Positions 4,171 through 43,072 of a DNA stretch of 64,000 bases are shown here, in pieces. The DNA lies in the IMG/VR virus record IMGVR_UViG_3300042868_007959, positions 1-64,000 of that record; one strand, written 5' to 3'. Numbering within the stretch: the stretch's first letter is position 1; each line of letters opens with the position of its first letter. The notes below the pieces were generated by a model that had not been told where the DNA came from, ran no database searches, and worked only from the letters and a program-made list of their open reading frames with translations. A program made the position numbers and the translations under genes.

Positions 4171-4171
4171 C

Positions 4172-18124: not shown

Positions 18125-18558
18125 TTATATACTTTGAAAGGTAAGGTTCTATTTTTATAACCTTCATAATCTTTTCTGAACTCCTCTAAACGTGGCTCAA
18201 TGTCGTCAGATTTGATAATCCAAAACTGAGCTCCCGCTTGAACTGCCTTTGATTGTTCTTCTGGTTCGTTTGATGATGAAATAATTCCAACAACTACGTG
18301 ATTACCGTATTCAAAATTAATTTTTCTAATTAATTCTATACCATCAAAAGAACTACCAATGATGTTTAAATCAACAAACACACAATCAGGTTTATCATTA
18401 TCATCCCCACTTTTGAACCATTTTTCGAATTTTTTTGCCGCTTCGTCAGAACTATTTAACGCGTTTAAAGACAAACTTATGTCAAGTAACGAACAAGCGT
18501 CCTCAAATACTAAATGGAATAAATCCTCGTCATCCACCAATAAAATTGAATCAATCAT
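18121..18558 (-). CDS. Stand-alone response regulator receiver domain
   Basis: ILLVDDE, VFVDLNI (phospho-Asp), ISSS, IIKS; no output domain. Confidence 0.92.
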   Translation of the reverse strand: MIDSILLVDDEDLFHLVFEDACSLLDISLSLNALNSSDEAAKKFEKWFKSGDDNDKPDCVFVDLNIIGSSFDGIELIRKINFEYGNHVVVGIISSSNEPEEQSKAVQAGAQFWIIKSDDIEPRLEEFRKDYEGYKNRTLPFKVYK

Positions 18559-18570
18559 TTTTTTCTTTTT

Positions 18571-20169
18571 TTATTTTATTTTTATTTTCATTTTAGTTCC
18601 TATTTCATTTTTCTCACAAGTAATTTTAAACTTGTGTTCTTCCAAAATTGCAACGCAAATATTTAATCCCAAACCAGTACCTGATTCCTTTTGTCCTTCT
18701 TTTCTTGTATATGGTTTACATAGGTAATCAAAATCTTCTTGTGTTAACCCCCTACCATTATCTTGAATGTAAACAGTATTCTCATCAGAATATATTTTAA
18801 CAAACTTAGTGTCAGAATCATTGTACTTTAAACCATTCCTGATTAAGTTGTCAACTGCAGTACAGAATAACGCTTCGTTTACTTCTATTGTTGGTAAGTC
18901 CTCAATAATTACTTGACTACTATATGCGGTTGATGATAGGTAATCAGATAGTATCACTTTTAAATCGCATTCCGCCTTATTTAAAACAACATCTTTTTTA
19001 ACAAGATTTGTAAACTCATATACCCCTTTATACACTTTTTGTGAATGTTTAAGACCTTCCTTAATCATTCTAATTGGTGCCTCTATTTTTAAATCGGTAA
19101 TGTCTTCGGGTTTTAATCTTCTTTCTAAAGAACTTAATCCTCTTGGCATATATGTATTGATACCTGAGTGCATATCGTGTCTTAATATTTTAGCGGCATG
19201 TTCTAAATAAGTGTTCTTTTTTTCAATCTCTTTCTTTTGTTCGTGAGTAGTGGTGACATCTGTTGCAATTTTCATAACACGATAAATCTTACCATCCATA
19301 CCAATGATTGGATTATAGGTTGCTTGAAGATGTATTAAGGAACCATCCTTTTTAACTCTAGTGATTTCACCAGTAAATAATATACCATCATTTAATTTTT
19401 CCCAAAAAAGAGAATATTCCTCACTTTTTGAGTGGTCCTCATCTATAAAAATCCTATGGTGTTTCCCAACCACTTCATCCAGTGATGAATATCCCATAGT
19501 ATTTAAAAACAATTCATTAGCGAAAATTATATTCCCCTTCAAATCAAACTCAATAACAGCGTTGGATTTATTTATCGCGTTCATTCTATTACGAATTTCC
19601 ACTTCTTTTTTCTTAAGATCTGTAACATCTTGTCTAATTGATGAGAATCCCTCCAACTTACCGTGTTTGTCAAATTTTGCCTTGATGTAGGTATCGACAT
19701 AATATAGTTCACCTGATTTTCCTTTGTTGGTAACAACATCATTCCATATCTCACCTTTCATTACTTTTTCATACATTTTACCCCAATATCCATCAGGTTG
19801 TAATCCTGAGTTTACAATAACATGATCCTTACCTTTAACCTCATCTAAAGACCAACCTGAAACATCCTCAAACTTTTTATTAACGTATGTAATTTTACCG
19901 TATTTATCGGCAACAGAAACGATGGTTGCAGAATCAATAAAATCTTCACTATCTTTTATTTGTTTTAATAAACCATCTTTTAACTCTACGGTTTGGGATT
20001 TCATTAAAAAATAAAATAATGGAGAAAATAATAAAAAGCAAGATATCTCAATAATTTTTGTTATATCAGTGGATCCAATAATCCCCGATAAAACAAAAAT
20101 TTTAGTTAAAAGAAAAGTAACCATCAAGATTACAGAAGGTATTATTAATAATTTACGTTTTTTAATCAT
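18571..20169 (-). CDS. Membrane PAS-PAS sensor histidine kinase
   Basis: Two N-terminal TMs, two PAS/PAC domains, H-box LRHD, N-box NLIRNGLKY, DNGRG, GTGLGL. Confidence 0.93.
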   Translation of the reverse strand: MIKKRKLLIIPSVILMVTFLLTKIFVLSGIIGSTDITKIIEISCFLLFSPLFYFLMKSQTVELKDGLLKQIKDSEDFIDSATIVSVADKYGKITYVNKKFEDVSGWSLDEVKGKDHVIVNSGLQPDGYWGKMYEKVMKGEIWNDVVTNKGKSGELYYVDTYIKAKFDKHGKLEGFSSIRQDVTDLKKKEVEIRNRMNAINKSNAVIEFDLKGNIIFANELFLNTMGYSSLDEVVGKHHRIFIDEDHSKSEEYSLFWEKLNDGILFTGEITRVKKDGSLIHLQATYNPIIGMDGKIYRVMKIATDVTTTHEQKKEIEKKNTYLEHAAKILRHDMHSGINTYMPRGLSSLERRLKPEDITDLKIEAPIRMIKEGLKHSQKVYKGVYEFTNLVKKDVVLNKAECDLKVILSDYLSSTAYSSQVIIEDLPTIEVNEALFCTAVDNLIRNGLKYNDSDTKFVKIYSDENTVYIQDNGRGLTQEDFDYLCKPYTRKEGQKESGTGLGLNICVAILEEHKFKITCEKNEIGTKMKIKIK

Positions 20170-21013: not shown

Positions 21014-21397
21014 ATGAAAAGAACCATTAAAAGAATATTAAAGGAAGAACTAACCGAAACAGAATATATGGGCGGAATTATTCCCTCACATTTTTTAGAG
21101 GAACTGGGAATTAAATTATTTAAAGAAGAAGATGTTGCCAGTCTTACAGAAATACAATTCGATACAAAACGTGTTGTAATAGATCTTTTTACTCTTGACG
21201 GAGACGAAGGATATGGTAGTTATGAAGATGCGATGAGTATACCTGATGGTTTTCAATACCAATACGGTTTTAACATTAATGATTTACCTGTAAGTTTTAT
21301 AAAGTACTTAATAAAAGAACTGAATGATAACTATGGTACCAATTATTTGTACCCATTTTTAGATATAATACCAAAAGGTATGTTTAAGAACCTTTAA
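21014..21397 (+). CDS. Hypothetical protein with leader MKRTIKRILKE
   Basis: Plus-strand leader gene with TATTTAT at 21002-21008. Confidence 0.8.
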   Translation: MKRTIKRILKEELTETEYMGGIIPSHFLEELGIKLFKEEDVASLTEIQFDTKRVVIDLFTLDGDEGYGSYEDAMSIPDGFQYQYGFNINDLPVSFIKYLIKELNDNYGTNYLYPFLDIIPKGMFKNL

Positions 21398-23636
21398 TAT
21401 AAGAATCAAATTTATCTATAATGATATTTTTATATGTATCCCATACATATTTAATATCGTCATCAGTCAAACCATACATATCTTTAGTATAATTAGAAAA
21501 AGAAGCGGGATAATTAATACGAAAAAGTAAATTATAACTTAAAGAAGATAGACGGTAAAAAGGTGCGAAGAATATATCGTCATTAATCGAAACTTTAGTA
21601 TCAGCCACAAGAAATTCCACAATTTTATTTAGATATTCATCTTTTCTATCTACAGATTCATTAATTCTATCACCATTCTTTTTTAATAACATTTCTTCAT
21701 ATATAATAGTAGATAATTTTTGTATGTATCTATCATATAACTCTTGTACAGTATCTATATCACATATACTATAAGTGTTACAAATATAATCTATATCTTC
21801 TCCTTCATCTAAATTAAAACCACTACCATTTGACCAATCATAAATATCATATATACTATAATCATATGCATCCTCATCCACATCCTCATCAGGATTAGTA
21901 AAAGGGTACCATATTTCTACTTTAGTTTCTGAATGATCACTAAACCTATTAATGTAAATATTATATTCGGTATCGTCTATCATAAAATCTACAATCTTAT
22001 TTAGATAATCAGATTTTCTATCTACAGATTCATTTATATTATTACCTTTAACCCTTAACATATCATCGTATATTTTAGTGAATAATTTCTCAGTGTATTT
22101 TTTAAATATATCTTCTATGGTTTTTACACTACGTATATTGTACACATCCCACATATATTCAATCTCCACTCTATTAAGGATATATTCACTCGATTCCTTA
22201 ATAGTAGATACCTCATATATAGTATAAGGGAATCCAGAGTCTTGTGCAGAATAAGGATACCTTATATAGACAAAAATTTCTGTAGAATCGACATTATATT
22301 GGGAAATACTAAGTTCATATTCGGTATCGTCTACCATATAATCAGAAATCTTATCTATTAGATCATCCTTTCTATCCACTGATTCATTAATGGGGACTTT
22401 AAATATATTAAGGATATTTTTTTTATATTTACTCCACACCCCTTTTACTTCTGAATTAGTTAACCCATAACTATCTTTACAATAGTTAAAAAAGTTTCTT
22501 TTCAACATATCATCAGATATTTTTTTTAAGTAGACTGTAGAAAACCATATAGATGCAAACGATGGTTTAAAAATTCCAAAATCTCCTTCTCCCATAGATA
22601 TTTCCGTGTCATCTACAAGAAATCCCACAATCTTATCTAAATAATCAGATTTTCTATCCACAGATTCGTTAATGGTAGGTACACCATTAATGATAGAAAA
22701 CCCATTAATTTTAGGGGTTAAAACTTTAAGATATCTTTTCCATAATTTTCTTATTTCCTCATCATCTGTCAATCCATACGTGTCTTTACAATAGTTAAAA
22801 AAGTTTCTTACATAAGAATTACCAATAAGATATTTTAATTCTAAATGATCTGTCATAGGTATTAGACCATAGAAATGATTAAAAGTAGGTTTAGCGTGAC
22901 CAGTAGGATAAGGTGGATACCACACTTTATTCTTTTGATCCACCATAGTGTCATCCACAAGGTAATCTATAATTTTATCCATATATTCACCTTTAGAAAT
23001 TTTATCCACAGATTCATTAATATTATCCTTACCAAATACAATATCCCTCATAACATCCTTATATGTTTCCCATACATAAACAATACCCTCTTCTGAAGTA
23101 ATTCCAAACGACTCATCAATGTATTCCATAAAACCGTCTATAGGGATATATGTCTCAAAAAGAAGTCTGTGAAAAGGTGTGAAATTATTACTACCTTGTC
23201 TAAGTGATCTCTTATATGTAAAAGGAAAAAATATCATCCTATTTTCATAGTCTACTTTAGTATCATCTACAAGAAATCCCACAACCTTATCTAAATATCT
23301 TTTTTTATTATCCACAGATTCATTAATGGGTTTAAGATCATACATAATAGATTCTTTATTATATCTATCCTTAATAATGGTTTTATAGTTGTCCCATATA
23401 TATTTTGTCTCATCGTAATTTAAACCATATGTATCCCTACAAGTTATCTGAACATCTGAAGGCATACCCCACGAAAGTTTATTTTTTAAATCATCGATAA
23501 AACTAGGTAAAGGTTTACCATTCGGACCTATCGGAGAAAAAGGATATATTATAACACCCGTTTCATATCTAATTATAGTATCATCAACAAACCACTTAAG
23601 AATCTTATCTAAATATATTTTTTTATTATCTTCCAT
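21384..23636 (-). CDS. Seven-module polyprotein with six INE|SVD junctions
   Basis: Six INESVD motifs, each followed by (Y/L)(L/I/M)(D/N)K(I/V)..(F/Y)(L/M)(V/I).DT; start could be 23642. Confidence 0.9.
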   Translation of the reverse strand: MEDNKKIYLDKILKWFVDDTIIRYETGVIIYPFSPIGPNGKPLPSFIDDLKNKLSWGMPSDVQITCRDTYGLNYDETKYIWDNYKTIIKDRYNKESIMYDLKPINESVDNKKRYLDKVVGFLVDDTKVDYENRMIFFPFTYKRSLRQGSNNFTPFHRLLFETYIPIDGFMEYIDESFGITSEEGIVYVWETYKDVMRDIVFGKDNINESVDKISKGEYMDKIIDYLVDDTMVDQKNKVWYPPYPTGHAKPTFNHFYGLIPMTDHLELKYLIGNSYVRNFFNYCKDTYGLTDDEEIRKLWKRYLKVLTPKINGFSIINGVPTINESVDRKSDYLDKIVGFLVDDTEISMGEGDFGIFKPSFASIWFSTVYLKKISDDMLKRNFFNYCKDSYGLTNSEVKGVWSKYKKNILNIFKVPINESVDRKDDLIDKISDYMVDDTEYELSISQYNVDSTEIFVYIRYPYSAQDSGFPYTIYEVSTIKESSEYILNRVEIEYMWDVYNIRSVKTIEDIFKKYTEKLFTKIYDDMLRVKGNNINESVDRKSDYLNKIVDFMIDDTEYNIYINRFSDHSETKVEIWYPFTNPDEDVDEDAYDYSIYDIYDWSNGSGFNLDEGEDIDYICNTYSICDIDTVQELYDRYIQKLSTIIYEEMLLKKNGDRINESVDRKDEYLNKIVEFLVADTKVSINDDIFFAPFYRLSSLSYNLLFRINYPASFSNYTKDMYGLTDDDIKYVWDTYKNIIIDKFDSYIKGS

Positions 23637-23760
23637 ATCCATATTATAAATACCTTAATATTTGGAAACGTAAATTTTTCTGGAAAATTTTTAACCCTAT
23701 ATACCGTTCACCAGAAATGGGTGTTCATTGTCACTGAACAAACCTATGTATTGAACAATA

Positions 23761-23813: not shown

Positions 23814-24116
23814 TTACCATTTTTCTCCTTCGTCATCTTTATTTCTAAGATCTTCTAATAAATCCATAAAGATTACACTCTCATCTATATAATGTAATTG
23901 ATATCTAAATTCCTCCATTATCTTTTCTGCGGCATCATAAATTTCATTTTCATACCATCCTGGATCAATATCTTGATGAGATAATTCACTTTCTATGGAC
24001 GAAACAATATCTTCGATGGAAATTGAATTACCCATTGACATATCTTGTGATTCTTTTACGGTTTTTTTAACTATTCTAGTTAAATCGTTCTCTGTTAATC
24101 TTACTATCTTTTTCAT
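23814..24116 (-). CDS. Acidic protein with leader MKKIVRLTENDLTRIVKKTVKE
   Basis: ORF track; TATTTATA at 24135-24143. Confidence 0.8.
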   Translation of the reverse strand: MKKIVRLTENDLTRIVKKTVKESQDMSMGNSISIEDIVSSIESELSHQDIDPGWYENEIYDAAEKIMEEFRYQLHYIDESVIFMDLLEDLRNKDDEGEKW

Positions 24117-24760: not shown

Positions 24761-25786
24761 TTATCTATTATAATTTATCATTTCTTCATATATAATAGGA
24801 CGTAGTTTATTTATATATCTATTATATAGTTCTTGTGTGATCCATCTTTGAGTTATACCAAATTGTTCTTCTAAATAATCTCTATCAGTTTCATTCAGAA
24901 AGAACTGTTCCCAGTCTACTTCCATTTCATCCATTTGAAATTCATCAGAGTCACCACTAGGGAAAGTTATCTCCACTCTTACATGTCGTTCTAAGTCATC
25001 TTCACCTAATTCTTCCATAAAGATATCCCATGTGGTGTCTTGTACCATAAAGTCTACTATTCTATTAAGTGTATCCTCTTTTCTTTCTACAGATTCATTC
25101 ATAGGGTTTTTAGATGATCCTAATAGTTCTTTTACTTTATCATATAATAAAGAATAATACCTTTGAGATATATTAGTAATAAGATTCCAATCTTTTATAC
25201 TATATGTATCATTAACATAATTAACAAAATTCAAATCATAACCTCTCCTTAATAATAATGGTAATACTTTATCAATACTGTATGAGTTAAATCCTTCAGA
25301 AGGGTAAACTATTACCACTCTATCTCTATGAAAATAGTATTCAGTATCATCTAACATATACTGTGAGATCTTATCTACTAATAGATCTTCCTTATTCTCT
25401 TTAGATTCATTCATTGGTTTACGTTCATAATTATCAAAGTCGTTTAATATGTTTGTAAATAAGATTGTATAATACTTTAAATATATTTTTTCTAGAATGG
25501 TTTCATCTTTTATACTATAGTTGTCATCCATATAGTTATAATCATATAAATTAAAAAAGATTACATCCACCCCTTTCTCTTTAAAATCATTTAGATGAGA
25601 TCTAATTTCACTCTCATTTAAATATATTAGATAATTATACATTGGATATTTTACCTCACATATTATCTCACCCATAAACCTATGGTAGACTTCATATGTA
25701 GTATCACCCAGTAGACTCTCTACAACTCTATCTACTAATAGATCCTCTCTATTCTCTTTAACAATACCTTTAATGGTTACCTTCAT
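24761..25786 (-). CDS. Three-module polyprotein (IVKE|N leader, MNE|S junctions)
   Basis: PMNESKENKEDLLVDKI..DDT and PMNESVERK. Confidence 0.85.
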   Translation of the reverse strand: MKVTIKGIVKENREDLLVDRVVESLLGDTTYEVYHRFMGEIICEVKYPMYNYLIYLNESEIRSHLNDFKEKGVDVIFFNLYDYNYMDDNYSIKDETILEKIYLKYYTILFTNILNDFDNYERKPMNESKENKEDLLVDKISQYMLDDTEYYFHRDRVVIVYPSEGFNSYSIDKVLPLLLRRGYDLNFVNYVNDTYSIKDWNLITNISQRYYSLLYDKVKELLGSSKNPMNESVERKEDTLNRIVDFMVQDTTWDIFMEELGEDDLERHVRVEITFPSGDSDEFQMDEMEVDWEQFFLNETDRDYLEEQFGITQRWITQELYNRYINKLRPIIYEEMINYNR

Positions 25787-26046: not shown

Positions 26047-27120
26047 CTAAAATAATCCACTATTTTTTATATAATGATGCCACACATATTGTATTTCTTC
26101 TATATGTAACCCATACATATTTTCACAATATATAGAAAACGCCCTGAAGGAATGTACTGGAAGATGTTGTTGTTTGTTAGGAGTAAGTAGGAGTATATTA
26201 CTAAAGTATGGATATTTAATTTCTCTCTCTTCATAATCTATAATAGTATCATCTATTATATACTGTACAATTTTATCTAAGTATATTTTTTTACTGTCTA
26301 CAGATTCATTCATTGGTTTGGAATTTATCTTATGATTAAATATAACTTTATATTGATCCCATACATATACTGATTCCTCATATGTTAATCCATATGTATC
26401 ATTACAATATTCAGAGAACGCATTAAATAATGGAGATTCAATTGTTGCGTAATATAATGGTGTTGATAAACCCCATTGGGAATTAATATAAGGAAGAAAA
26501 GGATATGTTACTAACTTTTGTTCATAGTCTAGTTCTGTATCATCGATTATATACTGTGATATATTGTCTAGATATTTTTCTTTTCTCTCTACAGATTCAT
26601 TAATAGATCCTTTATCGTCAACAATAGATTTATATTTTTCCCACACATATATAATTTCTTCACCTGTCAATCCATATATATCTTTACAATATTTAAGAAA
26701 AGAATAGTAGTAAGGAGAAGGTATTATAAAGGGTGGAATAATAGGAATGGGATTATATAGATATGGTAGTTTACATAGATTCTTATTGTAATCTATCTCT
26801 GTATCATCTATTATATACTGTACAATCTTATCTAGATATATTTCTTTATTGTCTACGGATTCATTGATAGATCCAGGAAGTTTAATCTTTCTATTAATTT
26901 GAAATAAAAGATTACCATAGACATATAAACAATCATCACTGTTTAAACCATAGTCAAACTCTAATATATCCCATACCGTACTGAAGAATCCATTTGAAAG
27001 AAACTCTACATCATAGGTTCTATTAGATCCATCTAATATCTCTACTGTAGAATGAAGATAATTTATTTTAATATCCTCTAACAAATACTCCACTATCTTA
27101 TTTAAATGTGTTTTATCCAT
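26047..27120 (-). CDS. Four-module polyprotein (INE|SV, MNE|SV)
   Basis: Three junctions, each followed by YLD(K/N)I.QYIIDDT. Confidence 0.85.
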   Translation of the reverse strand: MDKTHLNKIVEYLLEDIKINYLHSTVEILDGSNRTYDVEFLSNGFFSTVWDILEFDYGLNSDDCLYVYGNLLFQINRKIKLPGSINESVDNKEIYLDKIVQYIIDDTEIDYNKNLCKLPYLYNPIPIIPPFIIPSPYYYSFLKYCKDIYGLTGEEIIYVWEKYKSIVDDKGSINESVERKEKYLDNISQYIIDDTELDYEQKLVTYPFLPYINSQWGLSTPLYYATIESPLFNAFSEYCNDTYGLTYEESVYVWDQYKVIFNHKINSKPMNESVDSKKIYLDKIVQYIIDDTIIDYEEREIKYPYFSNILLLTPNKQQHLPVHSFRAFSIYCENMYGLHIEEIQYVWHHYIKNSGLF

Positions 27121-29213: not shown

Positions 29214-29420
29214 TCATATAAATTTTCTATTCGATATATTATGTACCTTCTTAACTTTAGAATAAGATCTAACACCTTGTTTCCTAATCTTTATCATCTT
29301 ATTTTTCATAATCAGATCCTGTTTAATCATCCCATCGTTTTGGAGTTTCATATTCCTTTCATGTAGACTATAATTAACCGAACAAGAAACTAATAGTATA
29401 AGTATTATTATAAATTTCAT
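29214..29420 (-). CDS. Small putative lipoprotein
   Basis: MKFIIILILLVSC lipobox-like signal. Confidence 0.6.
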   Translation of the reverse strand: MKFIIILILLVSCSVNYSLHERNMKLQNDGMIKQDLIMKNKMIKIRKQGVRSYSKVKKVHNISNRKFI

Positions 29421-33402: not shown

Positions 33403-34164
33403 CTATATGTATTGTTCAAAAATTTTATTATAATGCTCATAACCTACAATATTTTTATTTCTAATAATTTTAATTTCATTTAAATTATATCTCCACTCAG
33501 GTTCAACTATTCTAGGTTTTGCACCGTGAAAGTGTATTATTTTTGAATTTTCATTTATCCCCCAATACGGTTTCCAATTATATTCCAATGGTAATTTACC
33601 GATATTTCCTTTATATATATCATTGTACATTGTTTGATCCCAAACCGATAAACTATCAAAATTAGTGTTAATATAGTTTAATATTTTTTCATCGTCAATT
33701 AAGAATGATTTAACATTGAATAACATTACACCCGCATTAATATAAGACCAATTATTAACATCAAATTCTGGACACGCAGAGAAATATTTTGGTTTAATAG
33801 TATTGATATCGGAATAATCTCCTTTTTGGAAAATAACATCGTAATCAGTATAAAGACAAAATTCATCATCATAACCTAATTTACTTAATAAAAATGGGAT
33901 TTCAGTCCTTAAAAACGTTCCTGATGAAATAGTTAATGAACCTTCTTTTTTTGTTCTTTCCGAATTAACAAATGTATCATAACATCTATGTCTATGTTCG
34001 ATAATAGTTACACCATCAGGTAAATCTAACTCCTCCTTCTTCCCATCAAAAATAACAAACACTTCGAAATCTGTATTTTGTAGTGCAGAATTAACTGAAT
34101 GTTTAAGTAATTTTATATTGTCTGTCTTACATGTATCACTATTTGTTGCTAAAAACAATTTCAT
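33403..34164 (-). CDS. Glycosyltransferase family 8
   Basis: TFLR..IP, LYTDYDVIF (DxD), NAGVMLFN, DQTMYN, IIHFHGAKP. Confidence 0.9.
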   Translation of the reverse strand: MKLFLATNSDTCKTDNIKLLKHSVNSALQNTDFEVFVIFDGKKEELDLPDGVTIIEHRHRCYDTFVNSERTKKEGSLTISSGTFLRTEIPFLLSKLGYDDEFCLYTDYDVIFQKGDYSDINTIKPKYFSACPEFDVNNWSYINAGVMLFNVKSFLIDDEKILNYINTNFDSLSVWDQTMYNDIYKGNIGKLPLEYNWKPYWGINENSKIIHFHGAKPRIVEPEWRYNLNEIKIIRNKNIVGYEHYNKIFEQYI

Positions 34165-34165
34165 A

Positions 34166-35101
34166 TTATGTTGGTAATTTTTTCCCTTTGTGATGAGTTT
34201 TCTCACTCTCTATTCTTATCTTTATTTTTGGTGAATAACCTTTAGGTAATTTATTATTGATACCCTCAAATTCCCCCATTTCATTATCCATTCTTATAAC
34301 AATTTGTTTTTCTTTTATGTTCATCATAATTTGTCCAACAGTATGCATATTATACATATTTTTAGTCCTATATGGATTTAAGAATGGATCGTCATCATAT
34401 TTTTGTTTTAATGTATTAATTACATCCATATCTGTTTTGGCATCTTTTAAATGTTTTTTCGCCAATTCCATTCTAGATACAGATGATTTTCTTTTTTCAC
34501 CTGTAGTGTAACCCGCATCTTTTTGGTATACACCATGATTTGATCTAACAACTATTTTAGAATCCTCTTTTAATTTTTTAATTATTGGTGCATGTTTAGA
34601 TGTCATTTCAATAACATAAATATCTTTACCATCTGATACAAATGTCTCACCTCTTAAACCCCATTTACTTTTTGTTCCAGTAAACTCAATTAATGACTTT
34701 ACTGCGGATCTCATATCTTTTTTTGTGAGAGCTTCTCTTATTTTTTGCCCATCTTTTGAGTATACCCTCTTTTCAGTTTTATCGTTTTTAGTTTTTCTTT
34801 GTTTGAGTACTTTTTCACCTTCTTTTTCATCGGAAGCAGTTGATAATGCAGAATTTACTATACTGATTCCATACTCATTCATTCCCTCACTCCAATCAGT
34901 ATCAACATCCCTCCAATAGGCAATTTCAACACCGTCAACTATTTCGTGAACCAATTCAATTTTCGCCTTATAACCTCTATCCCTATTTTTTGCTAAAACA
35001 ATGGTATCTTTTAATTTAACTCCTGCAATTACACATTCATTTAATACTCTTGGTTCCGTTTCTTCGAGTAATATTCTTCTTATATTGTTTTGTAAATTCA
35101 T
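34166..35101 (-). CDS. Leader + N-terminal-nucleophile (Ntn) hydrolase, Cys23 after VLNE
   Basis: CVIAG..VLAKNRD, SEGMNEYGISIVNSAL, VRSNH are typical of Cys-Ntn hydrolases. Confidence 0.8.
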   Translation of the reverse strand: MNLQNNIRRILLEETEPRVLNECVIAGVKLKDTIVLAKNRDRGYKAKIELVHEIVDGVEIAYWRDVDTDWSEGMNEYGISIVNSALSTASDEKEGEKVLKQRKTKNDKTEKRVYSKDGQKIREALTKKDMRSAVKSLIEFTGTKSKWGLRGETFVSDGKDIYVIEMTSKHAPIIKKLKEDSKIVVRSNHGVYQKDAGYTTGEKRKSSVSRMELAKKHLKDAKTDMDVINTLKQKYDDDPFLNPYRTKNMYNMHTVGQIMMNIKEKQIVIRMDNEMGEFEGINNKLPKGYSPKIKIRIESEKTHHKGKKLPT

Positions 35102-35667: not shown

Positions 35668-35853
35668 TTATTTTATATTATTTTTTCCGTATTCTTTCCA
35701 TTCTTTTTTGGGGATGATCGTATCATTCATATCTAAACAACTCCATTCACATGTATTGTGATCATAAAAATGAACATGTATTCTATCTACGTGAACTTTT
35801 GGTGAACAAGATGATAGTAACAACAAAACTAATATTTTTTTTATATTACTCAT
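35668..35853 (-). CDS. Small putative lipoprotein
   Basis: ILVLLLLSSC lipobox. Confidence 0.65.
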   Translation of the reverse strand: MSNIKKILVLLLLSSCSPKVHVDRIHVHFYDHNTCEWSCLDMNDTIIPKKEWKEYGKNNIK

Positions 35854-36467: not shown

Positions 36468-36710
36468 TTATTTTATAATAACAGTGCCTTCCATAACACC
36501 CCAACTCGATTTTTCCCTAAAGTAAACCACATTCGTAGTAGTATCTTTGGTACATATCCACATTTGGTTTTCTTTCCATGTTACATTTAAGACAACTTCG
36601 TTTGTTTTAAGTTTTAACTCTTCAGTACCTCCCCATCTTCTCGCTCTAGCATTATCTGTACAAGAGGACAATCCAATTACCCCCATTAGTAAAATTATTA
36701 TTTTTTTCAT
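36468..36710 (-). CDS. Putative lipoprotein
   Basis: MKKIIILLMGVIGLSSC lipobox. Confidence 0.75.
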   Translation of the reverse strand: MKKIIILLMGVIGLSSCTDNARARRWGGTEELKLKTNEVVLNVTWKENQMWICTKDTTTNVVYFREKSSWGVMEGTVIIK

Positions 36711-36827: not shown

Positions 36828-38261
36828 TTACTTTATCATTTTATTAAATTTTTTAATAGTATGTGCCAAATCTAAATCTTTCCCGTTAAATGGTTTCGTT
36901 GGGGATATCGTATTTTTTTCATTATTCATCGCAAAATTATCTAAATTCTCAAATAAAGTTTTCAAATCTGGTGTGAAATTATTTAAAACCCAACAAGCCA
37001 AAATTCTATATACAGGAAGTGTATCTATTTGTTGTTCCTTATTAACCCAACCTTCATTCCAATATGAAAAAAGAACACCAACCCAATCCATTTTTTCTCC
37101 AGGTTTAAGATTTAGTCTACTCCTAATTTCTGTAAGATTTGCAGTTTTTTCTGAATGTTCACAATTATACCCCAAATTCTTTGAGTTTAAAATCAAACTA
37201 TCTATCAAATTTTTTATCTTAGTTTTAGATCTTTTTTCACCTATTTTTCCGTATTTTGGGTGAGATATGGATGATAAATCTTTTATACCTTTTTCTAAAT
37301 CTAATTTCAATTCTTCTGGTGTATCAAAGTCAACGGGTTCACCATCAGATTCTCTATCGTCATAATTGTTTAAAACCTCAACAGATTTTTTTAAATCTTC
37401 CAAACCTATTTTATTATTTTCCTCTTTTTTAGGTGGGAATGATTTAGAAATCACTTCTGTAGATGTTAATAAACCAACCCTATCTTCTAATAAGTGTTGT
37501 ATTTCATGTGCAAAAGTTTGTTCATAATATGTCAACCCACCAATTAAAGGAGATGGTACAAAAACCCTACAATCATTTATATCGTTACCCCCTGAAACTG
37601 TTGACCCTAACGCACCTAACCACGCAGTTAATTCATTACTCCCATTTTGTATTAGTGCATCATATTCTTTGTCAAAAATATGTCCCAAACTGGAATTTTC
37701 TAAATTAGAATCGATATAGGCATCTGAAACAAATGCAAAATTATTTTCATTACTACCATATCTGTTAAGCATAACTAATTCAATATTATCAATAACCTTT
37801 AAATAATTTTTAAATTTAGTTTCCACTTCAGGCATACTTATACCAAACATTTCCATATGCTTTGATTTGGTTTTTGTATCATTTAACCAATTTCTCCACC
37901 AAGTTTTTGCCTTTTCTAATAATGGAGTAATTTTTGCCCTATCAGAATTTCTCGTATCATTGAGTTTTTGGTAAAATAATTTTTTTTGTTGTTCAAATGA
38001 ATCATCTATACCACTATATGTATCTTTATAATTTTTAGGTGTTTCGTCCTCACTAAATCCATAATTAACACATTTTTTCTTAACAATATCCCAGTATTGT
38101 CCTTCAGTACATTCAGGCCACTCTAATTTGTCACTACCTGTAGGTTTTAACATTTCGATTGCGTTAGATTCAGTAATTAAATTATTACGTGAGTTATTAT
38201 CTTCGTTGATAATACCCATCATCTTTTTAATTTTTTGTATCTCTTCTATTAAATTTTTCAT
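36828..38261 (-). CDS. Leader + putative zincin metallopeptidase (HExxH)
   Basis: TFAHEIQHLLE; leader MKNLIEEIQKIKKMMGIINE. Confidence 0.55.
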   Translation of the reverse strand: MKNLIEEIQKIKKMMGIINEDNNSRNNLITESNAIEMLKPTGSDKLEWPECTEGQYWDIVKKKCVNYGFSEDETPKNYKDTYSGIDDSFEQQKKLFYQKLNDTRNSDRAKITPLLEKAKTWWRNWLNDTKTKSKHMEMFGISMPEVETKFKNYLKVIDNIELVMLNRYGSNENNFAFVSDAYIDSNLENSSLGHIFDKEYDALIQNGSNELTAWLGALGSTVSGGNDINDCRVFVPSPLIGGLTYYEQTFAHEIQHLLEDRVGLLTSTEVISKSFPPKKEENNKIGLEDLKKSVEVLNNYDDRESDGEPVDFDTPEELKLDLEKGIKDLSSISHPKYGKIGEKRSKTKIKNLIDSLILNSKNLGYNCEHSEKTANLTEIRSRLNLKPGEKMDWVGVLFSYWNEGWVNKEQQIDTLPVYRILACWVLNNFTPDLKTLFENLDNFAMNNEKNTISPTKPFNGKDLDLAHTIKKFNKMIK

Positions 38262-38279
38262 ATGTTATTCACTTATATT

Positions 38280-38939
38280 TTATTTACATTGTCCCCACTC
38301 AAAACTTCTAACTCTACATCTTTTTACACTTTTAAGACTGATGTTGAATGAGCAAAGGATTGCGTTAGCTAACCATATAGCTATCAATGTAACTAATACA
38401 ACACTAGCAATAGTTAATATTAATGCTGGCATTGTAAAGGATCCAAAAATTGTGACTAATGCCATACTAGTACCAAAAAATTCACTTAATACTTCTTCAT
38501 TATCAGATACGCTTTTTTCTGCCTCAGATTTTTTAGATTTTATATTTTTAAATAATTTTTTTAAATCTTTTACTGTTAAAGTATGTAAAAAATCTATAAA
38601 TTTATCCATATATTCTTTTATTGTATCTAATATTTCTTCTGCCTTATCTTTAAATTTATCTTTAACTATTTGACCAAATTTCTTTTCTACATAACCATCC
38701 ATATCAGACATCTGACAAATTTCTGTATTGTCTAAAGAATTAATTACGTCTTCCTGACTAGTTAAAGAAATGCCGACCTCTTTCATTATCTCATCACCAC
38801 CCTCAGATGTCAATTCATCCATAAATGACATTTTATTATCATCATCTATATCATATTCTCTAAGTAATTTCTTATTATCACCTAATTGATATTCAAAAAG
38901 ATGTTTCATTTTTCTAAGTTCTAATTCAATGTTTTTCAT
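38280..38939 (-). CDS. Leader protein with hydrophobic C-terminal segment
   Basis: ..KKLLRE leader; hydrophobic stretch after VLSE. Confidence 0.75.
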   Translation of the reverse strand: MKNIELELRKMKHLFEYQLGDNKKLLREYDIDDDNKMSFMDELTSEGGDEIMKEVGISLTSQEDVINSLDNTEICQMSDMDGYVEKKFGQIVKDKFKDKAEEILDTIKEYMDKFIDFLHTLTVKDLKKLFKNIKSKKSEAEKSVSDNEEVLSEFFGTSMALVTIFGSFTMPALILTIASVVLVTLIAIWLANAILCSFNISLKSVKRCRVRSFEWGQCK

Positions 38940-38956
38940 AATATGTATGTTTTATT

Positions 38957-39250
38957 TTATTTACAAATCGTACTTTGTATTGCTGACCACCAAGTATCTG
39001 ACTCATCAACCTCTGAATCACCAGTCATTCCGTACTCATCTAATTCACTTCTAATTTCGATTGTAGCTTCTTTCCACATCCTCAAAGGCTTCTTTATTTC
39101 ATCCCACGATTCAGGATTTTCTTTTCTATTTCCTAAATGATTTTCTAATAATTTCATTCCCTCTTCATATGTGTCGACACTCATTATATTACAAATGTCT
39201 TTCTTTTTATTAGTTTCTTCCTTTAATATTTTTCTAATTATAGATTTCAT
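38957..39250 (-). CDS. Hypothetical protein with leader MKSIIRKILKE
   Basis: ORF track. Confidence 0.8.
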   Translation of the reverse strand: MKSIIRKILKEETNKKKDICNIMSVDTYEEGMKLLENHLGNRKENPESWDEIKKPLRMWKEATIEIRSELDEYGMTGDSEVDESDTWWSAIQSTICK

Positions 39251-39255
39251 ATTAC

Positions 39256-39786
39256 TTATCTTTTACTGATGATATCCTTAAGTTTTTCTAATGAAACTTT
39301 TAATATCTCACCTTGTTCTCTTGGTCTTAATTGACTCATTTGTTTTGCAGTTGATATCGAATACCTACTATCATTTTCGAACCACTGCCCATCTTTAAAA
39401 ACAAAAATAGGGTACCAATTATATGAATATACTACGTATGACCTATTTTCATATTGGGAATGGGTATTACTACCTTTAAATGGTACCTTAGCCATAACTA
39501 AATCTCTACCTGTTTTATTACTAGTAGCAACTCTTTTTTTAGTTATATCAGTTCTCACCAACTCATCGTACTCATCTTTGAAGTAATTGTCTTTAAATAA
39601 CTGATAAAGTTCAAATGCGTCTACACCTGAAAACCCGAAGTTTTTATTAATAAAAGCAATAACCTTACTGTATGGGGTATCTACTCCAAACCCCTCAGAT
39701 TTTAATGTCTTGATAATATATTTTTCTAATTTTTCTTTTCTATTATCAACCTCTTCTTTTAATATTTTTTTGATAGTATTTTTCAT
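39256..39786 (-). CDS. Hypothetical protein with leader MKNTIKKILKE
   Basis: ORF track; TATTTATA at 39790-39798. Confidence 0.8.
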   Translation of the reverse strand: MKNTIKKILKEEVDNRKEKLEKYIIKTLKSEGFGVDTPYSKVIAFINKNFGFSGVDAFELYQLFKDNYFKDEYDELVRTDITKKRVATSNKTGRDLVMAKVPFKGSNTHSQYENRSYVVYSYNWYPIFVFKDGQWFENDSRYSISTAKQMSQLRPREQGEILKVSLEKLKDIISKR

Positions 39787-41077: not shown

Positions 41078-43072
41078 TTAATTAATTATTTTTCTAATTG
41101 TCCCGTCATCGTAAATTTCTAACAATAAACCTTTAGTTTGTTGATCAACTTCCTGACCTAATAAATTTATATATTTAACAATTTTTTTATCTTTGATTTG
41201 TTTAGATACACTTATTGGTCCATATATTTTAAATTGCCCATCTATATCATATTGGTTTAATCTATAATAAGTTAACTCATTTAAGTTATAATCAATAAAA
41301 GAATATTTTATTTCTGTGTTACTATTATATGCTGCTTCTTTAATTGAGATGGTTTCCCAAAAAACCCCATCTAAACTCATTTCCAAATCAAAGTAACTAG
41401 AATTATGTTCAGATGCAGTTGCCCACTTTATCACATTATATTGTTGGTATGGGTACCCCTCAAATTCAATTAGTTCTACAGGTAATGATATAGGGTTAGA
41501 TATTCTTATAGTATACTCCTCAATTTCACCATATCCATACCCAGTTGAGTAGTAGGCATCCACGTTTGGAGTTGAATTCCAAACTGAAAGGACTCTCATA
41601 AGGACATCTCCTGTTGTCGCATCTAAGGGGATTGTTATTGATTGTGATGTTGAATTTGCAGTTGGTTTTAACAAAACATTCTCAGATGTCTGAAACGTAC
41701 CGTCACCATTCCAATCAATCCAAGCACCATAACCTTGACCTGGTGGTACTGTATTTGACGCAGTAACAGATAAATTATAAGGTTCACCTTTTGTGACATT
41801 CCCAATAATTGAGGTGAAATCAGAATAAGCATCACCATCATTAGTAGTTGTGTTATTAATGTCACTAATAGTCACATTAGTAATATGATCACCATCAGCA
41901 ATTCCTGATGAATATGGAGGTGCACTTTTTAATGTTATATTTACAATATTTGACACACCAGAAGGGCAAGTACCGTCTTTAGATGTTGTTCTAACATAAA
42001 CGTTTGGTTGTTGTATATTTAATTGGATGTTAAAGGGGTTAGTTGGGGTAACGAATGTATTACTAACCGTACCAAAATTATTGTAAGAGAATTCAATTTT
42101 TGTAATTGTTCCACCATTACCTGTAGTAGTTAAAGAAACGGCATCATTCACTGTTGTTAAAATTTTATCTGAACTTAATGTTCCTCCATTTGTCGGAGTC
42201 GTACAAACTGTTACTGATGTTACTGTTGCCTGAAACCCAGACCTAATACCTAAACCATCTGAAGTAAATCTTAAAGTTAGTTGACCTAAAGAGTTTTCCG
42301 CAGTAATGCTTGTCGGTAATGATGTACCATTTAATGTGGTCAATAAAGTAGAACTTGTATTTGGTCCGTCATAGACATACAGATAATCCCAACCTGACTC
42401 TAGATTAAATGATGAAAAATTTAATTGTAATTTTTTTGTATTATCTGATGGTGTTAAAGTTACTGTTTGGTCTAAACTATTGGCGTAATTATCTGTTGTC
42501 CCACCCCTATCTGTTATGGTATATGTTAATGTGGATGTTAGAGTTTGACTACAATTTGACTCAAAAGGGATAATAGTATTAGAATTACTATTCGAAGACG
42601 TAACACCAAAATCATCTAAATACCATACATTCATTCCTGACGCTCTCGTATCCCTTATTCGAATATAGACATTTACTAAATTTAAAATAGTTAAATCAAT
42701 TGTCCTTTTATTATATGTTGCGGTAGGATTGGCGGAATATGTATTACGAGTTGTCCAGTTTGTATTATCAGTAGATGTTTCCACTACAAAATTGTGTGTC
42801 GCGGAAGTACCACTTCTTCTTATCCAAAAAGTCACTACTGACGGATTTGATATTATGGGTGTCCTTATGAAATCTCCTTGACCATTAAATGATAAATTAT
42901 TATTACCAGTTCTTACTGATGCCGTACTATATCCTATTGATGATTGATCCCAAGTTCCTCCCTGAGTTGGTAATGATCCATTAAAACTTTCATAAATTAA
43001 ATATTGACTACATTGTGTGATACCCAAAAAAGAAATTAGGGTAAATAGTGAGATTAATATTATTCTTTTCAT
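41078..43072 (-). CDS. Secreted surface protein: signal peptide + CUB + GEVED + LPVEL Ig-like + T9SS-CTD-like tail
   Basis: LESGWDYLYVYDGP (CUB); AWIDWNGDGTF..GEIEEY (GEVED); LPVELIEF..YYRLNQYDIDG; NLLGQEV..IYDDGTIRKII. Confidence 0.8.
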   Translation of the reverse strand: MKRIILISLFTLISFLGITQCSQYLIYESFNGSLPTQGGTWDQSSIGYSTASVRTGNNNLSFNGQGDFIRTPIISNPSVVTFWIRRSGTSATHNFVVETSTDNTNWTTRNTYSANPTATYNKRTIDLTILNLVNVYIRIRDTRASGMNVWYLDDFGVTSSNSNSNTIIPFESNCSQTLTSTLTYTITDRGGTTDNYANSLDQTVTLTPSDNTKKLQLNFSSFNLESGWDYLYVYDGPNTSSTLLTTLNGTSLPTSITAENSLGQLTLRFTSDGLGIRSGFQATVTSVTVCTTPTNGGTLSSDKILTTVNDAVSLTTTGNGGTITKIEFSYNNFGTVSNTFVTPTNPFNIQLNIQQPNVYVRTTSKDGTCPSGVSNIVNITLKSAPPYSSGIADGDHITNVTISDINNTTTNDGDAYSDFTSIIGNVTKGEPYNLSVTASNTVPPGQGYGAWIDWNGDGTFQTSENVLLKPTANSTSQSITIPLDATTGDVLMRVLSVWNSTPNVDAYYSTGYGYGEIEEYTIRISNPISLPVELIEFEGYPYQQYNVIKWATASEHNSSYFDLEMSLDGVFWETISIKEAAYNSNTEIKYSFIDYNLNELTYYRLNQYDIDGQFKIYGPISVSKQIKDKKIVKYINLLGQEVDQQTKGLLLEIYDDGTIRKIIN

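What the first reader, a model, noticed from the sequence alone, without database searches (positions are those of the whole stretch)
34166..35101. Ntn-hydrolase whose nucleophile Cys sits directly after the leader site (VLNE|C): a zymogen possibly armed by head maturation
Seen: MNLQNNIRRILLEETEPRVLNE is followed by C23-VIAG..LAKNRD..EGMNE.GI..VNSAL..RSNH. Established: Cys-type Ntn hydrolases (choloylglycine hydrolase, C45 families) need the catalytic Cys as the free N-terminal residue. Inference: cleavage after E22 exposes exactly that residue. This independently supports the predicted cut position and suggests an amidase that is inactive until packaged. The substrate is unknown (acyl-amide, cell-envelope or peptide bonds are possible).
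Basis: partly seen in the sequence, partly recalled or inferred. Interest (0 to 1): 0.87.

Follow-up and report, generated by a model that had tools for sequence, protein, structure and literature searches.

The report
Phage amidase zymogen behind a cleavable leader
A jumbo-phage gene encodes an uncharacterised cysteine Ntn-hydrolase (amidase) whose catalytic cysteine sits directly after a T4-type protease site (Leu-x-Glu), so the enzyme probably switches on only when its 22-residue leader is cut off, most likely during capsid maturation.

Summary
Window 34166-35101 (- strand) is a real 311-aa gene. Its AlphaFold model matches only Ntn-hydrolases, best the C45 enzyme isopenicillin-N acyltransferase, then bile-salt and penicillin V hydrolases. 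Cys23 is invariant in 134 diverse relatives, together with K38, R40, D41, N75, N188 and R210, and it lies just before the first strand.

Before the Cys, P1 is Glu in 119/119 close homologues and 49/49 distant cluster representatives. P3 is Leu/Ile/Val/Met in 119/119 and 48/49. P2 varies. This is the phage T4 gp21 cleavage motif, L/I-x-E.

- Leaderless Met-Cys relatives exist.
- The same leader types head about 20 unrelated ORFs in the window.
- An unrelated peptidoglycan-binding family carries at least five interchangeable leaders, all ending [LIM]-x-E (106/106).
- In relatives that encode a gp21-type (S77) protease, the capsid protein, the protease and the Ntn protein share FLNE or SLNE sites.
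- In two genotypes the Ntn gene lies inside the head-gene module.

Not shown: the protease of this phage (not found in about 150 kb read), packaging into the capsid, or the substrate. Self-cleavage, usual for C45 enzymes, remains the main rival. I rate it a new variant of known kinds.

The parts
34166..35101 (-). Complete ORF, 311 aa plus stop: leader-bearing Cys-Ntn hydrolase precursor
   Evidence: ORF list. 746 homologues. AF2 model with pLDDT 81 and pTM 0.82. Foldseek top hits are all Ntn hydrolases.
35036..35101 (-). Leader, residues 1-22 (MNLQNNIRRILLEETEPRVLNE). Predicted helix 3-15, then a low-confidence linker at 13-21. It belongs to the window's class A leaders (I[RK][RK]IL.E).
   Evidence: AF2 secondary structure and pLDDT. 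The same leader class heads 6 other ORFs in the window, always 4-6 residues after the initiator Met. Leader length and sequence vary among homologues.
35036..35044 (-). Predicted cleavage motif L20-N21-E22 (P3-P2-P1). The scissile bond is E22|C23.
   Evidence: P1=E 119/119 and P3=ILVM 119/119. 49/49 and 48/49 among distant representatives. T4 gp21 cuts after L/I-X-E (PMC9026906).
35033..35035 (-). Cys23 codon (TGT): predicted N-terminal nucleophile of the mature enzyme
   Evidence: Invariant in 134/134 diverse relatives. It lies two residues before strand 25-29. It is residue 2, after Met, in 16 representative homologues.
34169..35035 (-). Mature Ntn-hydrolase domain, residues 23-311
   Evidence: Foldseek against PDB: IAT 2x1c/2x1d E=5e-8, TM 0.55; BSH and PVA 1e-5 to 1e-3; proteasome and HslV. 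NCBIfam C45_proenzyme matches 33/33 members.
34976..34990 (-). K38-N39-R40-D41-R42 motif (KNRDR), 15-19 residues after the nucleophile
   Evidence: K38, R40 and D41 are invariant in 134 sequences. The spacing resembles the Arg/Asp pair of C59/C45 enzymes and the NRDE motif of TANGO2-like proteins; that comparison is from my own knowledge, with NRDE as a structural neighbour.
34532..34546 (-). R186-S-N188-H189-G190 block. N188 is invariant and is a candidate oxyanion or active-site Asn.
   Evidence: Invariant and near-invariant columns of A6 and A2. The residue role is inferred.
33403..34164 (-). Downstream, tightly abutting glycosyltransferase family 8 gene with no leader, probably co-transcribed
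   Evidence: Pfam Glyco_transf_8, 8.9e-8. Its start lies 2 nt after the Ntn stop. The only terminator-like site follows it, at 33368-33349.

Best explanation
The gene encodes a cysteine Ntn-hydrolase, an amidase or acyl-transferase distantly related to the C45 family, made as an inactive precursor. Its 22-residue leader belongs to a set of modular N-terminal leaders that this phage places on many unrelated proteins, all ending in [L/I/V/M]-x-Glu. A Glu-specific phage protease of the T4 gp21 (Peptidase S77) type cuts after Glu22. By analogy with the T4 capsid-targeting sequences, this would happen inside the prohead after the leader has brought the protein into the scaffold core. The cut leaves Cys23 as the free N-terminal nucleophile and arms the enzyme only in the assembled particle. 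The enzyme is then delivered with the DNA at the next infection. Shown: the fold, the invariant Cys and partner residues, the conserved cut motif, the modular leaders, and the co-occurrence with S77 proteases and matching capsid sites in relatives. Inferred: trans-cleavage by the prohead protease, packaging, and delivery. The substrate is unknown. Other leader-tagged proteins here carry peptidoglycan-binding and M23 peptidase domains, so my leading guess is a cell-envelope amide bond (peptidoglycan peptide or N-acyl lipid).
For: Fold and active site:
- Fold. Invariant C23, K38, R40, D41, N75, N188 and R210 in 134 sequences.
- Weak but consistent C45 sequence signal: NF040521 in 33/33 members, best 2.3e-13. 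Pfam AAT in 27/33, and above threshold in relatives P0213 and P0207.

Cut site and leaders:
- P1=E and P3=hydrophobic with P2 free.
- Leaderless Met-Cys homologues show the leader is not part of the enzyme.
- Leader motifs are strictly N-terminal: 19/19 regex matches in 128,000 six-frame residues lie 2-7 aa after a start Met.
- An independent peptidoglycan-binding family has P1=E 106/106 and P3=L/I/M 106/106, with at least 5 different leader types before one mature domain and a variable P1'. That family has no way to self-process.
- Leader swapping was also seen for ORF 38280.

Relatives with a gp21-type protease:
- Cultured relative MA9V-1 encodes Portal_T4, Peptidase_S77 and Gp23.
- Its Ntn leader ends EFLNE|C. 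Its capsid protein has SEFINE|A and GGFLNE|S. Its protease-scaffold protein has LINE|S, MLNE|C and FINE|S.
- In L110 and L101 the Ntn gene lies in the head module, 1.8 kb after the MCP or between the portal and core/protease/scaffold/MCP genes. There the sites are protease MSLNE|S, MCP SRFLNE|A and Ntn ASLNE|C or MEFKEFLFNE|C.

T4 precedent:
- T4 IPII and IPIII start MKTYQEFIAE|A.
- gp21 cuts after L/I-X-E, and 7-10-residue propeptides suffice (PMC9026906).
- The AF2 linker at residues 13-21 has pLDDT below 50, that is, it is modelled as exposed.
Against: - C45 and related Cys-Ntn enzymes normally self-cleave, so no external protease is strictly needed (family name; own knowledge).
- No S77 protease, gp23-like capsid or T4-like portal gene was found in the window or in the next roughly 85 kb of the same or a near-identical contig. 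About 104 kb remain unread.
- The window shares only 2 ORFs with MA9V-1, so T4-like affiliation of this phage is not established. There are only hints: an Rnl1-type RNA ligase and hits to T4-like marine myophages.
- Head-module adjacency is seen in only two genotypes.
- The P1=E state is essentially one clade (6 state changes on the tree), so the counts are not independent events.
- The sister clade has an equally strict [KR]-x-[AGS]|C, often with only a 5-residue leader. That looks more like a self-processing requirement and warns that P3/P1 conservation alone does not prove a trans-protease.
- There are no virion proteomics for any member; the MA9V-1 paper has only SDS-PAGE.
Confidence: 0.52

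Rival explanations
1. Self-activating Ntn hydrolase. The precursor cleaves its own E22|C23 bond by the usual N-to-S acyl shift of C45/C59-type enzymes. The leader serves only as a targeting or solubility tag, or as a short-lived inhibitor. The prohead protease is not required.
For: - The closest sequence family is 'C45 family autoproteolytic acyltransferase/hydrolase'.
- The best structural match is the IAT precursor and mature pair.
- The sister clade keeps a strict [KR]-x-[AGS]|C, often with only 5 residues before the Cys and inside very large proteins. That fits self-processing better than capsid targeting.
- Some E-class leaders are only 4-7 residues long (MLNE|C, MVEE|C).
- No head protease was found in about 150 kb of this phage.
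Against: - The P3/P1 pair equals the gp21 motif and recurs at capsid, protease and scaffold sites of the same genomes.
- The same leader types and the same [LIM]-x-E junction occur on unrelated proteins that cannot self-cleave.
- Glu at P1 is unusual for Ntn self-processing sites, where small residues are common (own knowledge; the sister clade has A/G/S).
- The linker is modelled as disordered, not docked.
Confidence: 0.3
2. The leader is a signal for something other than the capsid, and is cut by a non-head Glu-specific protease. The destination could be a phage-made compartment, the envelope, or timed activation late in infection, for example for lysis. The Ntn enzyme would then act in the producing cell, not in the next host.
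For: - Leader-tagged proteins include peptidoglycan-binding proteins, an M23 peptidase and an HExxH protein. These would also suit a lysis or envelope-remodelling role.
- About 20 tagged ORFs lie in 64 kb of an otherwise non-structural region.
- No head genes are nearby.
Against: - The leaders are charged amphipathic helices, not Sec/Tat-like; the window's lipoprotein-like ORFs do have classical signals.
- The motif equals that of T4-type head maturation.
- The Ntn gene sits inside head modules in two relatives.
Confidence: 0.12
3. The protein is not a working hydrolase. It would be a structural or binding protein that merely kept the Ntn fold, and the Cys is conserved for another reason.
For: No sequence hit to any solved structure. 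It scores below the curated cut-offs of Pfam AAT and NF040521. It lacks the roughly 100-residue alpha-subunit of canonical C45 enzymes.
Against: A full constellation of invariant polar residues (C, K, R, D, N, N, R) persists across sequences only 30-45% identical. Cys is always directly at a processing site or after Met. Pseudo-enzymes usually lose such residues.
Confidence: 0.03

Closest known systems
Acyl-CoA:isopenicillin N acyltransferase (IAT, MEROPS C45; PDB 2x1c precursor, 2x1d mature) and the NCBIfam NF040521 'C45 family autoproteolytic acyltransferase/hydrolase'
   Same: Best structural match (E=5e-8, TM 0.55). It is the only consistent sequence family signal. Both are made as a precursor with a Cys nucleophile exposed by cleavage. 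An Asp lies about 18 residues after the Cys (own knowledge for IAT).
   Different: Only about 14% identity. Scores fall below the curated cut-offs (18.1 vs 23.2 bits; 36.7 vs 85 bits). The roughly 100-residue alpha-subunit is replaced by a 22-residue leader. P1 is Glu, not Gly. It is phage-encoded.
Choloylglycine (bile-salt) hydrolase and penicillin V acylase (C59; e.g. PDB 3hbc, 2iwm, 6ufy)
   Same: Ntn fold (E=1e-5 to 1e-3). The Cys becomes N-terminal after loss of Met or of a very short propeptide, as in the Met-Cys relatives here. The Cys...Arg/Asp...Asn...Arg residue pattern is similar (own knowledge).
   Different: No detectable sequence similarity. TM is only 0.4-0.5. The leader is long and shared with unrelated phage proteins.
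Phage T4 internal proteins IPI/IPII/IPIII and Alt: capsid-targeting sequence plus gp21 processing
   Same: A short N-terminal leader ending L/I-x-Glu and cut after the Glu: T4 MKTYQEFIAE|A against MEFKEFLFNE|C, EFLNE|C and VLNE|C here. The leaders sit on unrelated cargo proteins and are exchangeable. Relatives encode the same protease family, S77.
   Different: Here the cut would create the catalytic residue itself, which is obligatory zymogen activation. The leaders are longer, come in at least 4-5 sequence classes, and head about 20 ORFs in 64 kb. Packaging and cleavage are untested.
TANGO2 / NRDE family (PF05742)
   Same: Listed as a structural neighbour of the nearest Atlas cluster (TM 0.68-0.78). 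It has Met-Cys at the N-terminus and an N-R-D-E motif some 20 residues later (own knowledge), compared with K-N-R-D-R here.
   Different: No Pfam hit to PF05742 at E<=0.1 in 33 members. It is cellular, not viral, and has no leader.
Polyvalent proteins of phages and conjugative elements (Iyer et al. 2017, PMC5512222)
   Same: The sister clade of this domain is fused in 500-2400-aa proteins to RNA ligase, 2H phosphoesterase, topoisomerase IB, superoxide dismutase and Zeta-toxin-like kinase domains. One such gene lies next to a capsid module.
   Different: The window's protein is a single-domain protein. An Ntn domain is not among the domains listed in that paper ('NTN' occurs 0 times).

Membership tests
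Ntn-hydrolase superfamily (Cys type) | Four-layer alpha-beta-beta-alpha fold | tested here: met
   AF2 model with pLDDT 81 and pTM 0.82. All 19 PDB hits at E<=1e-3 are Ntn hydrolases: IAT, BSH, PVA and proteasome.
Ntn-hydrolase superfamily (Cys type) | Nucleophile is the first residue of the mature chain, at the start of a central strand | tested here: inconclusive
   Cys23 is invariant in 134/134 and lies 2 residues before strand 25-29. It is residue 2 in 16 Met-Cys representatives. A residue-by-residue superposition on IAT Cys103 could not be made, because no coordinates or alignments were returned. The mature N-terminus is not measured.
Ntn-hydrolase superfamily (Cys type) | Conserved polar partners (Arg/Asp near the N-terminus, oxyanion Asn, distal Arg) | tested here: inconclusive
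   K38, R40, D41, N75, N188 and R210 are invariant. Their equivalence to the known catalytic residues is inferred from spacing only.
Peptidase C45 / Pfam PF03417 AAT / NCBIfam NF040521 | Score above the curated family threshold | tested here: not met
   Query: AAT 18.1 bits vs 23.2; NF040521 36.7 bits vs 85. Relatives P0213 (30.9) and P0207 (25.0) pass the AAT threshold. 33/33 members hit NF040521 at E<=0.1.
Peptidase C45 / Pfam PF03417 AAT / NCBIfam NF040521 | About 100-residue N-terminal alpha-subunit retained after cleavage at Gly|Cys | tested here: not met
   The leader is 22 residues and P1 is Glu. The NF040521 match covers only profile positions 146-313.
Peptidase C45 / Pfam PF03417 AAT / NCBIfam NF040521 | Autoproteolytic activation | not testable with these tools
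   Needs expression of the precursor and mass measurement.
T4-type capsid-targeted, gp21-processed head cargo | Short N-terminal leader ending L/I-x-Glu | tested here: met
   V-L-N-E22|C23. The motif is conserved family-wide. For the T4 motif and CTS.
T4-type capsid-targeted, gp21-processed head cargo | Same genome encodes a gp21/S77 prohead protease whose capsid and scaffold substrates carry the same motif | tested here: inconclusive
   Met in relatives MA9V-1, L101 and L110. Not found in the window or in the further roughly 85 kb read of this phage. About 104 kb are unread.
T4-type capsid-targeted, gp21-processed head cargo | Protein present in virions in its cleaved form | not testable with these tools
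   No proteomics exist for any member. The MA9V-1 paper has SDS-PAGE only.
Polyvalent proteins | Several unrelated effector domains in one polypeptide | tested here: not met
   The query is a single domain of 311 aa. Only the sister-clade relatives are multidomain.

The most novel reading that the evidence does not exclude
This jumbo phage tags a large cargo set with interchangeable capsid-targeting leaders that its head protease removes after [LIVM]-x-Glu. The set has at least 22 proteins and includes peptidoglycan-binding proteins, an M23 peptidase, a zincin-like protein and this Ntn amidase. For the Ntn amidase the cut creates the catalytic residue. Head maturation would then be an obligatory safety catch, keeping an envelope- or lipid-directed amidase inert in the producing cell and live in the particle that attacks the next cell. 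The sister clade ([KR]-x-[AGS]|C in polyvalent proteins) would be the same principle tuned to another processing system.
Probability: 0.35. Interest if true: 0.8.

Novelty: new variant of a known kind. Interest (0 to 1): 0.64.

Why it matters
Because an Ntn enzyme needs its nucleophile as residue 1, this protein acts as a natural reporter that fixes a predicted phage protease cut to one peptide bond. It therefore validates the leader site seen on some twenty other proteins of this phage.

If the prohead protease is the activator, this would be a clear case of an injected enzyme kept as a zymogen until capsid maturation. In the papers I read on head-cargo processing (T4, phiKZ, SPN3US), proteolysis is described as trimming cargo, with no case noted of it creating an active site. 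My two literature searches on Ntn hydrolases in phage heads found no such case either.

The family is large and almost wholly viral among the nearest Atlas clusters. It has 535 clusters at 50% identity, has no known function, and is absent from PHROGs. Only two cultured phages carry it.

The modular leaders could also serve as tools for loading foreign proteins into capsids of phages that infect Bacteroidota-like hosts, as the T4 CTS is used in E. coli.

Tried and rejected
1. Sequence searches against PDB found nothing relevant, whether with the protein, a 33-sequence profile or a 134-sequence profile. Only the fold comparison links the protein to Ntn enzymes, and no residue-level superposition was available.
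2. PHROGs gave no hit.
3. Megablast of 20 kb of the window against cultured phages gave no match.
4. I hunted for the head protease and capsid gene of this very phage.
   - The MA9V-1 capsid search in the protein database gave no hit with a matching contig length.
   - I walked along the source contig from 64 kb to about 150 kb with nine look-ups. That found RNA ligase, NAD salvage, methylases, a sigma factor, SbcC, an M23 peptidase and a 2766-aa protein, but no head genes.
5. Only 2 window ORFs have relatives in MA9V-1 and 4 in the T4-like head loci, so lineage assignment failed.
6. I checked the capsid neighbourhood of a sister-clade polyvalent protein (L222) for a matching [KR]-x-A motif. 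It was uninformative.
7. I considered and dropped the idea that [LIVM]-x-E in the first 30 residues is significant in itself. By my rough estimate it would turn up by chance in about half of AT-rich N-termini. The argument rests instead on aligned junctions and on the long leader regexes.
8. The promoter scan showed nothing above shuffles.
Full report
**What is there.** The window is AT-rich (29% GC). It equals positions 1-64000 of a 253,879-bp metagenomic phage contig, JGI 3300042868 Ga0453135_0000010. The coordinates of the Ntn gene coincide in both. On the - strand, 34166-35101 is a 311-aa ORF reading MNLQNNIRRILLEETEPRVLNE-C23-VIAG....

The gene is real and widespread. It has 746 homologues at E<=1e-3 in the 90%-clustered protein collection, some on contigs up to 282 kb. 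It has 535 clusters in the 50%-clustered library. Among 50,697 cultured phage records, only Chryseobacterium jumbo phages MA9V-1 and MA9V-2 carry it, at 40% identity and annotated as hypothetical. PHROGs has no family for it.

**Fold and active site.**
- An AlphaFold2 model built on 33 homologues has mean pLDDT 81 and pTM 0.82. It shows a helix at residues 3-15, a low-confidence linker at 13-21, and the first strand at 25-29.
- Foldseek against the PDB returns only Ntn-hydrolases among significant hits. These are isopenicillin-N acyltransferase precursor and mature forms (2x1c/2x1d; E=5e-8; TM about 0.55), then bile-salt hydrolases and penicillin V acylase, then proteasome beta subunits and HslV.
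- Sequence methods agree, but weakly. Pfam AAT gives E=0.0023, below threshold, though it hits 27/33 homologues.
- NCBIfam NF040521, 'C45 family autoproteolytic acyltransferase/hydrolase', hits 33/33 members, best 2.3e-13. For the query the score is 36.7 bits against a cut-off of 85, and the match covers only the C-terminal two thirds of the profile.
- PDB sequence searches find nothing.
- In an alignment of 134 diverse domain sequences (30-48% identical to the query), the invariant residues are C23, K38, R40, D41, G73, N75, G151, N188, G197 and R210.

An invariant Cys at the start of the first strand, followed about 17 residues later by Arg-Asp and further on by Asn and Arg, is the pattern expected of a Cys-Ntn active site (own knowledge of C59/C45 enzymes). 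I could not superpose residues, because the tools return no coordinates.

**The residues before the Cys.** In the 119 closest full-length homologues, P1 is Glu in 119/119. P3 is I/L/V/M in 119/119, while P2 takes 12 different residues. The leader varies from 11 to 34 residues. Among cluster representatives the family splits into three N-terminal states:

- **E class (49 representatives).** P1=E in 49/49 and P3=L/I/V/M in 48/49. P2 and P4-P6 are free. Leaders run from 4 to about 35 residues, or the domain is embedded in larger proteins.
- **'Small' class (67 representatives).** P1=A/S/G in 67/67 and P3=K/R in 67/67. The Cys is mostly at residue 6-8, or internal, in proteins of 500-2400 aa.
- **Met-Cys class (16 representatives).** No leader.

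On a tree built from the columns after the Cys, these states are essentially clades, with 6 changes against a shuffled mean of 54. The counts therefore reflect long-maintained constraint, not many independent origins. The Met-Cys forms show that the leader is not part of the enzyme. One Met-Cys member lies beside U-box/Ufd2-like genes, which hints at a giant virus.

**The leader is a general module of this phage.** Four leader patterns occur in the window:
- I[RK][RK]IL.E
- MK-IIITE-Q[FL]
- LTE.QL..IV
- EE[IL].[RK]IK.MM

Together they match 19 times in 128,000 six-frame residues. Every match lies 2-7 residues after the initiator Met of a substantial ORF. The Ntn leader belongs to the first class, with six other ORFs. 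Each class contains one or two [IL]-x-E triplets.

Tagged proteins include two with peptidoglycan-binding domains (3469-4170 and 4413-5195) and a 477-aa HExxH protein (36828-38261). Further along the contig there is a 751-aa protein with an M23 peptidase domain.

As an independent test I searched the peptidoglycan-binding protein 4413-5195. In 106 homologues the junction between leader and mature domain has P1=E in 106/106 and P3=L/I/M in 106/106. P2 takes 10 different residues and P1' takes 7. At least five unrelated leader types precede the same mature domain. ORF 38280 shows the same leader swap with a conserved LL[RK]E|YDIDDD junction. These proteins have no means of self-cleavage. A trans-acting Glu-specific protease is therefore the simplest reason for the conserved junction. 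The Ntn protein, which must be cut exactly there, ties the motif to a scissile bond.

**Link to T4-type head maturation.** T4 gp21 cuts after L/I-X-E. [quoted passage not shown] Propeptides as short as 7 residues occur, and Asp at P1 blocks processing (PMC9026906). T4 IPII and IPIII read MKTYQEFIAE|A.

MA9V-1 has a T4-like portal, an S77 protease domain at the head of a 1347-aa protease-scaffold protein, and a gp23-like capsid protein.
- Its Ntn homologue starts MTSANNNEFLNE|C.
- Its capsid protein has SEFINE|A and GGFLNE|S. The latter aligns with a Glu that is invariant in 18 related capsid proteins.
- Its protease-scaffold protein carries LINE|S, MLNE|C, FINE|S and MLNE|A.

In two IMG/VR genotypes the Ntn gene lies within the head module.
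- In L110 it lies 1.8 kb downstream of the MCP gene on the same strand.
- In L101 it lies between the portal gene and the core/protease/scaffold/MCP genes.
- There the protease begins ...FTMSLNE|S and the MCP begins MNANSRFLNE|A. The Ntn proteins begin MEFRNFIENASLNE|C and, from the internal Met, MEFKEFLFNE|C. The last is a 10-residue leader much like the T4 CTS.
- The catalytic His and Ser of S77 are conserved in these proteases.

**What is missing.** I could not show that the window's own phage has such a protease.
- The window has no recognisable structural genes.
- Pattern searches of IMG/VR with capsid and protease alignments never returned a contig carrying a close Ntn homologue.
- A nine-step walk from 64 kb to about 150 kb found only metabolic, replication and unknown genes. 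It ran along the same contig and then a near-identical one.
- The phage shares only two ORFs with MA9V-1.
- Hints of T4-like kinship are weak: an Rnl1-type RNA ligase, NAD salvage genes, and hits to Melnitz, immuto and HTVC008M myophages.
- Head-module adjacency occurs in two genotypes only. Closely related protease loci lack the Ntn gene within reach.
- No virion proteomics exist.

**Mechanism and rivals.** I consider removal of the leader at E22|C23 very likely, about 0.85. It rests on the Ntn requirement, the Met-Cys relatives and the invariant junction.

Who cuts is less certain. I give 0.52 to cleavage by a gp21-type prohead protease after leader-mediated loading into the prohead, so that the amidase is armed only in the particle and delivered at the next infection.

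The main rival (0.30) is ordinary Ntn self-processing. It is favoured by family precedent and by the sister clade's strict [KR]-x-[AGS]|C with 5-residue leaders in polyvalent-type proteins. Those proteins are fused to RNA ligase, 2H phosphoesterase, topoisomerase IB, SOD and Zeta-toxin-like kinase domains. An Ntn domain is not among the domains described for polyvalent proteins.

A third reading (0.12) keeps the trans-protease but places the event outside the capsid. An inactive pseudo-enzyme is unlikely (0.03).

The substrate is unknown. The company of peptidoglycan-binding, M23 and zincin-like proteins among leader-tagged ORFs makes a cell-envelope amide my first guess. That is inference only. 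The abutting glycosyltransferase-8 gene adds little.

**Comparison and novelty.** The protein works like a Cys-Ntn zymogen and its leader works like a T4 capsid-targeting sequence. It is not a member of C45 by the curated thresholds and lacks the alpha-subunit. It has no sequence similarity to C59. ESM-Atlas neighbours are viral clusters without names, with C45, NRDE/TANGO2 and conjugal-transfer CBAH proteins as more distant look-alikes. BFVD holds two unnamed viral matches. My literature searches found no report of an Ntn hydrolase as head cargo or as a prohead-protease substrate.

I therefore rate it a new variant of known kinds. The interest is moderate to high, because the hypothesis is sharp and testable in a cultured phage (MA9V-1).

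Noticed in passing
window ORFs (- strand unless noted) 563-1492, 1476-2057, 3469-4170, 4171-4410 (approx.), 4413-5195, 5198-5482, 7217-7822, 9647-10468, 14562-15014, 15011-15337, 15659-15982, 21014-21397 (+), 23814-24116, 36828-38261, 38280-38939, 38957-39250, 39256-39786, 54927-55313, 55324-56088, 63077-63493, 63493-63843: About 20 unrelated ORFs start with one of four or five conserved amphipathic leader types, such as MKxxIRKILKEE, MKIIITENQFKRLINE, MKKxxxLTESQLxKIVKxVLNE and MNLQEELNRIKDMM. Each contains [IL]-x-E. The motifs occur only at N-termini (19/19 regex matches). Only 2 more were seen in the next roughly 85 kb.
   Followed up: partly
window 4413-5195 (-) and its 106 homologues P0315-P0420: A peptidoglycan-binding-domain protein family in which at least five different leader types precede the same mature domain. 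The junction is invariant: P1=E and P3=L/I/M in 106/106.
   Followed up: yes
window 36828-38261 (-): A 477-aa leader-bearing protein (MKNLIEEIQKIKKMMGIINE...NNLITE|S) with an HEIQH (HExxH) motif, suggesting a zincin-like metallopeptidase. It has no Pfam or PHROG hit.
   Followed up: no
L267:6883-9138 (same contig, about 111-114 kb): A 751-aa protein with leader MKRILVTESQYSKLVKLLNE|Q and a C-terminal M23 peptidase domain. Its PHROG hits include endolysin, tape-measure and minor head protein families.
   Followed up: partly
P0144-P0268 subset (sister clade), e.g. P0205, P0207, P0213: A sister clade of the Ntn domain has a strict [KR]-x-[AGS]|C junction (67/67). It sits at the N-terminus or inside proteins of 500-2400 aa with RNA ligase, LigT/2H, topoisomerase IB, Fe/Mn-SOD, DUF5661 and Zeta-toxin-like domains. 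P0205 lies upstream of a capsid module.
   Followed up: partly
L220 (contig carrying Met-Cys homologue P0212): A leaderless Met-Cys family member lies beside genes with Ufd2P_core/U-box, AP endonuclease and ion-transport hits. This suggests a giant virus of eukaryotes rather than a phage.
   Followed up: no
window 58841-59029 (+) and 59030-59524 (+): Adjacent + strand genes with precomputed Pfam hits to ribosomal protein S21 and ferritin, inside an otherwise - strand block.
   Followed up: no
window 18571-20169 (-) and 18121-18558 (-): A phage-encoded PAS/HATPase histidine kinase. Directly downstream lies a small ORF that looks like a response-regulator receiver by its N-terminal sequence alone; that ORF was not tested.
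   Followed up: no
window 10476-11084, 11074-11754, 15334-15651, 21384-23642, 24761-25786, 26047-27120 (all -): A further recurrent N-terminal motif..YLNKIVEYLVDDT.., heads six ORFs of very different lengths (105-752 aa). It does not end in [IL]-x-E in the same way as the leaders.
   Followed up: no
window 29214-29420, 35668-35853, 36468-36710, 41078-43072 (all -): The first three, small ORFs, have lipoprotein-type signal peptides (hydrophobic stretch, then SC or SSC). The fourth, a 664-aa protein with an N-terminal hydrophobic signal-like stretch, carries CUB and GEVED domains. These have classical export signals, in contrast with the charged leaders.
   Followed up: no
L101:7824-11618 (-): The T4-like portal gene of this Ntn-carrying phage is 1264 aa and appears to contain inserted intein or homing-endonuclease-like sequence. 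This is read from the translation only.
   Followed up: no
L270:1-6995 (near-identical contig, about 145-152 kb equivalent): A gene for a 2766-aa protein, followed by genes for 968-, 747- and 431-aa proteins. None has a Pfam or PHROG hit. They may mark the start of a structural block.
   Followed up: partly
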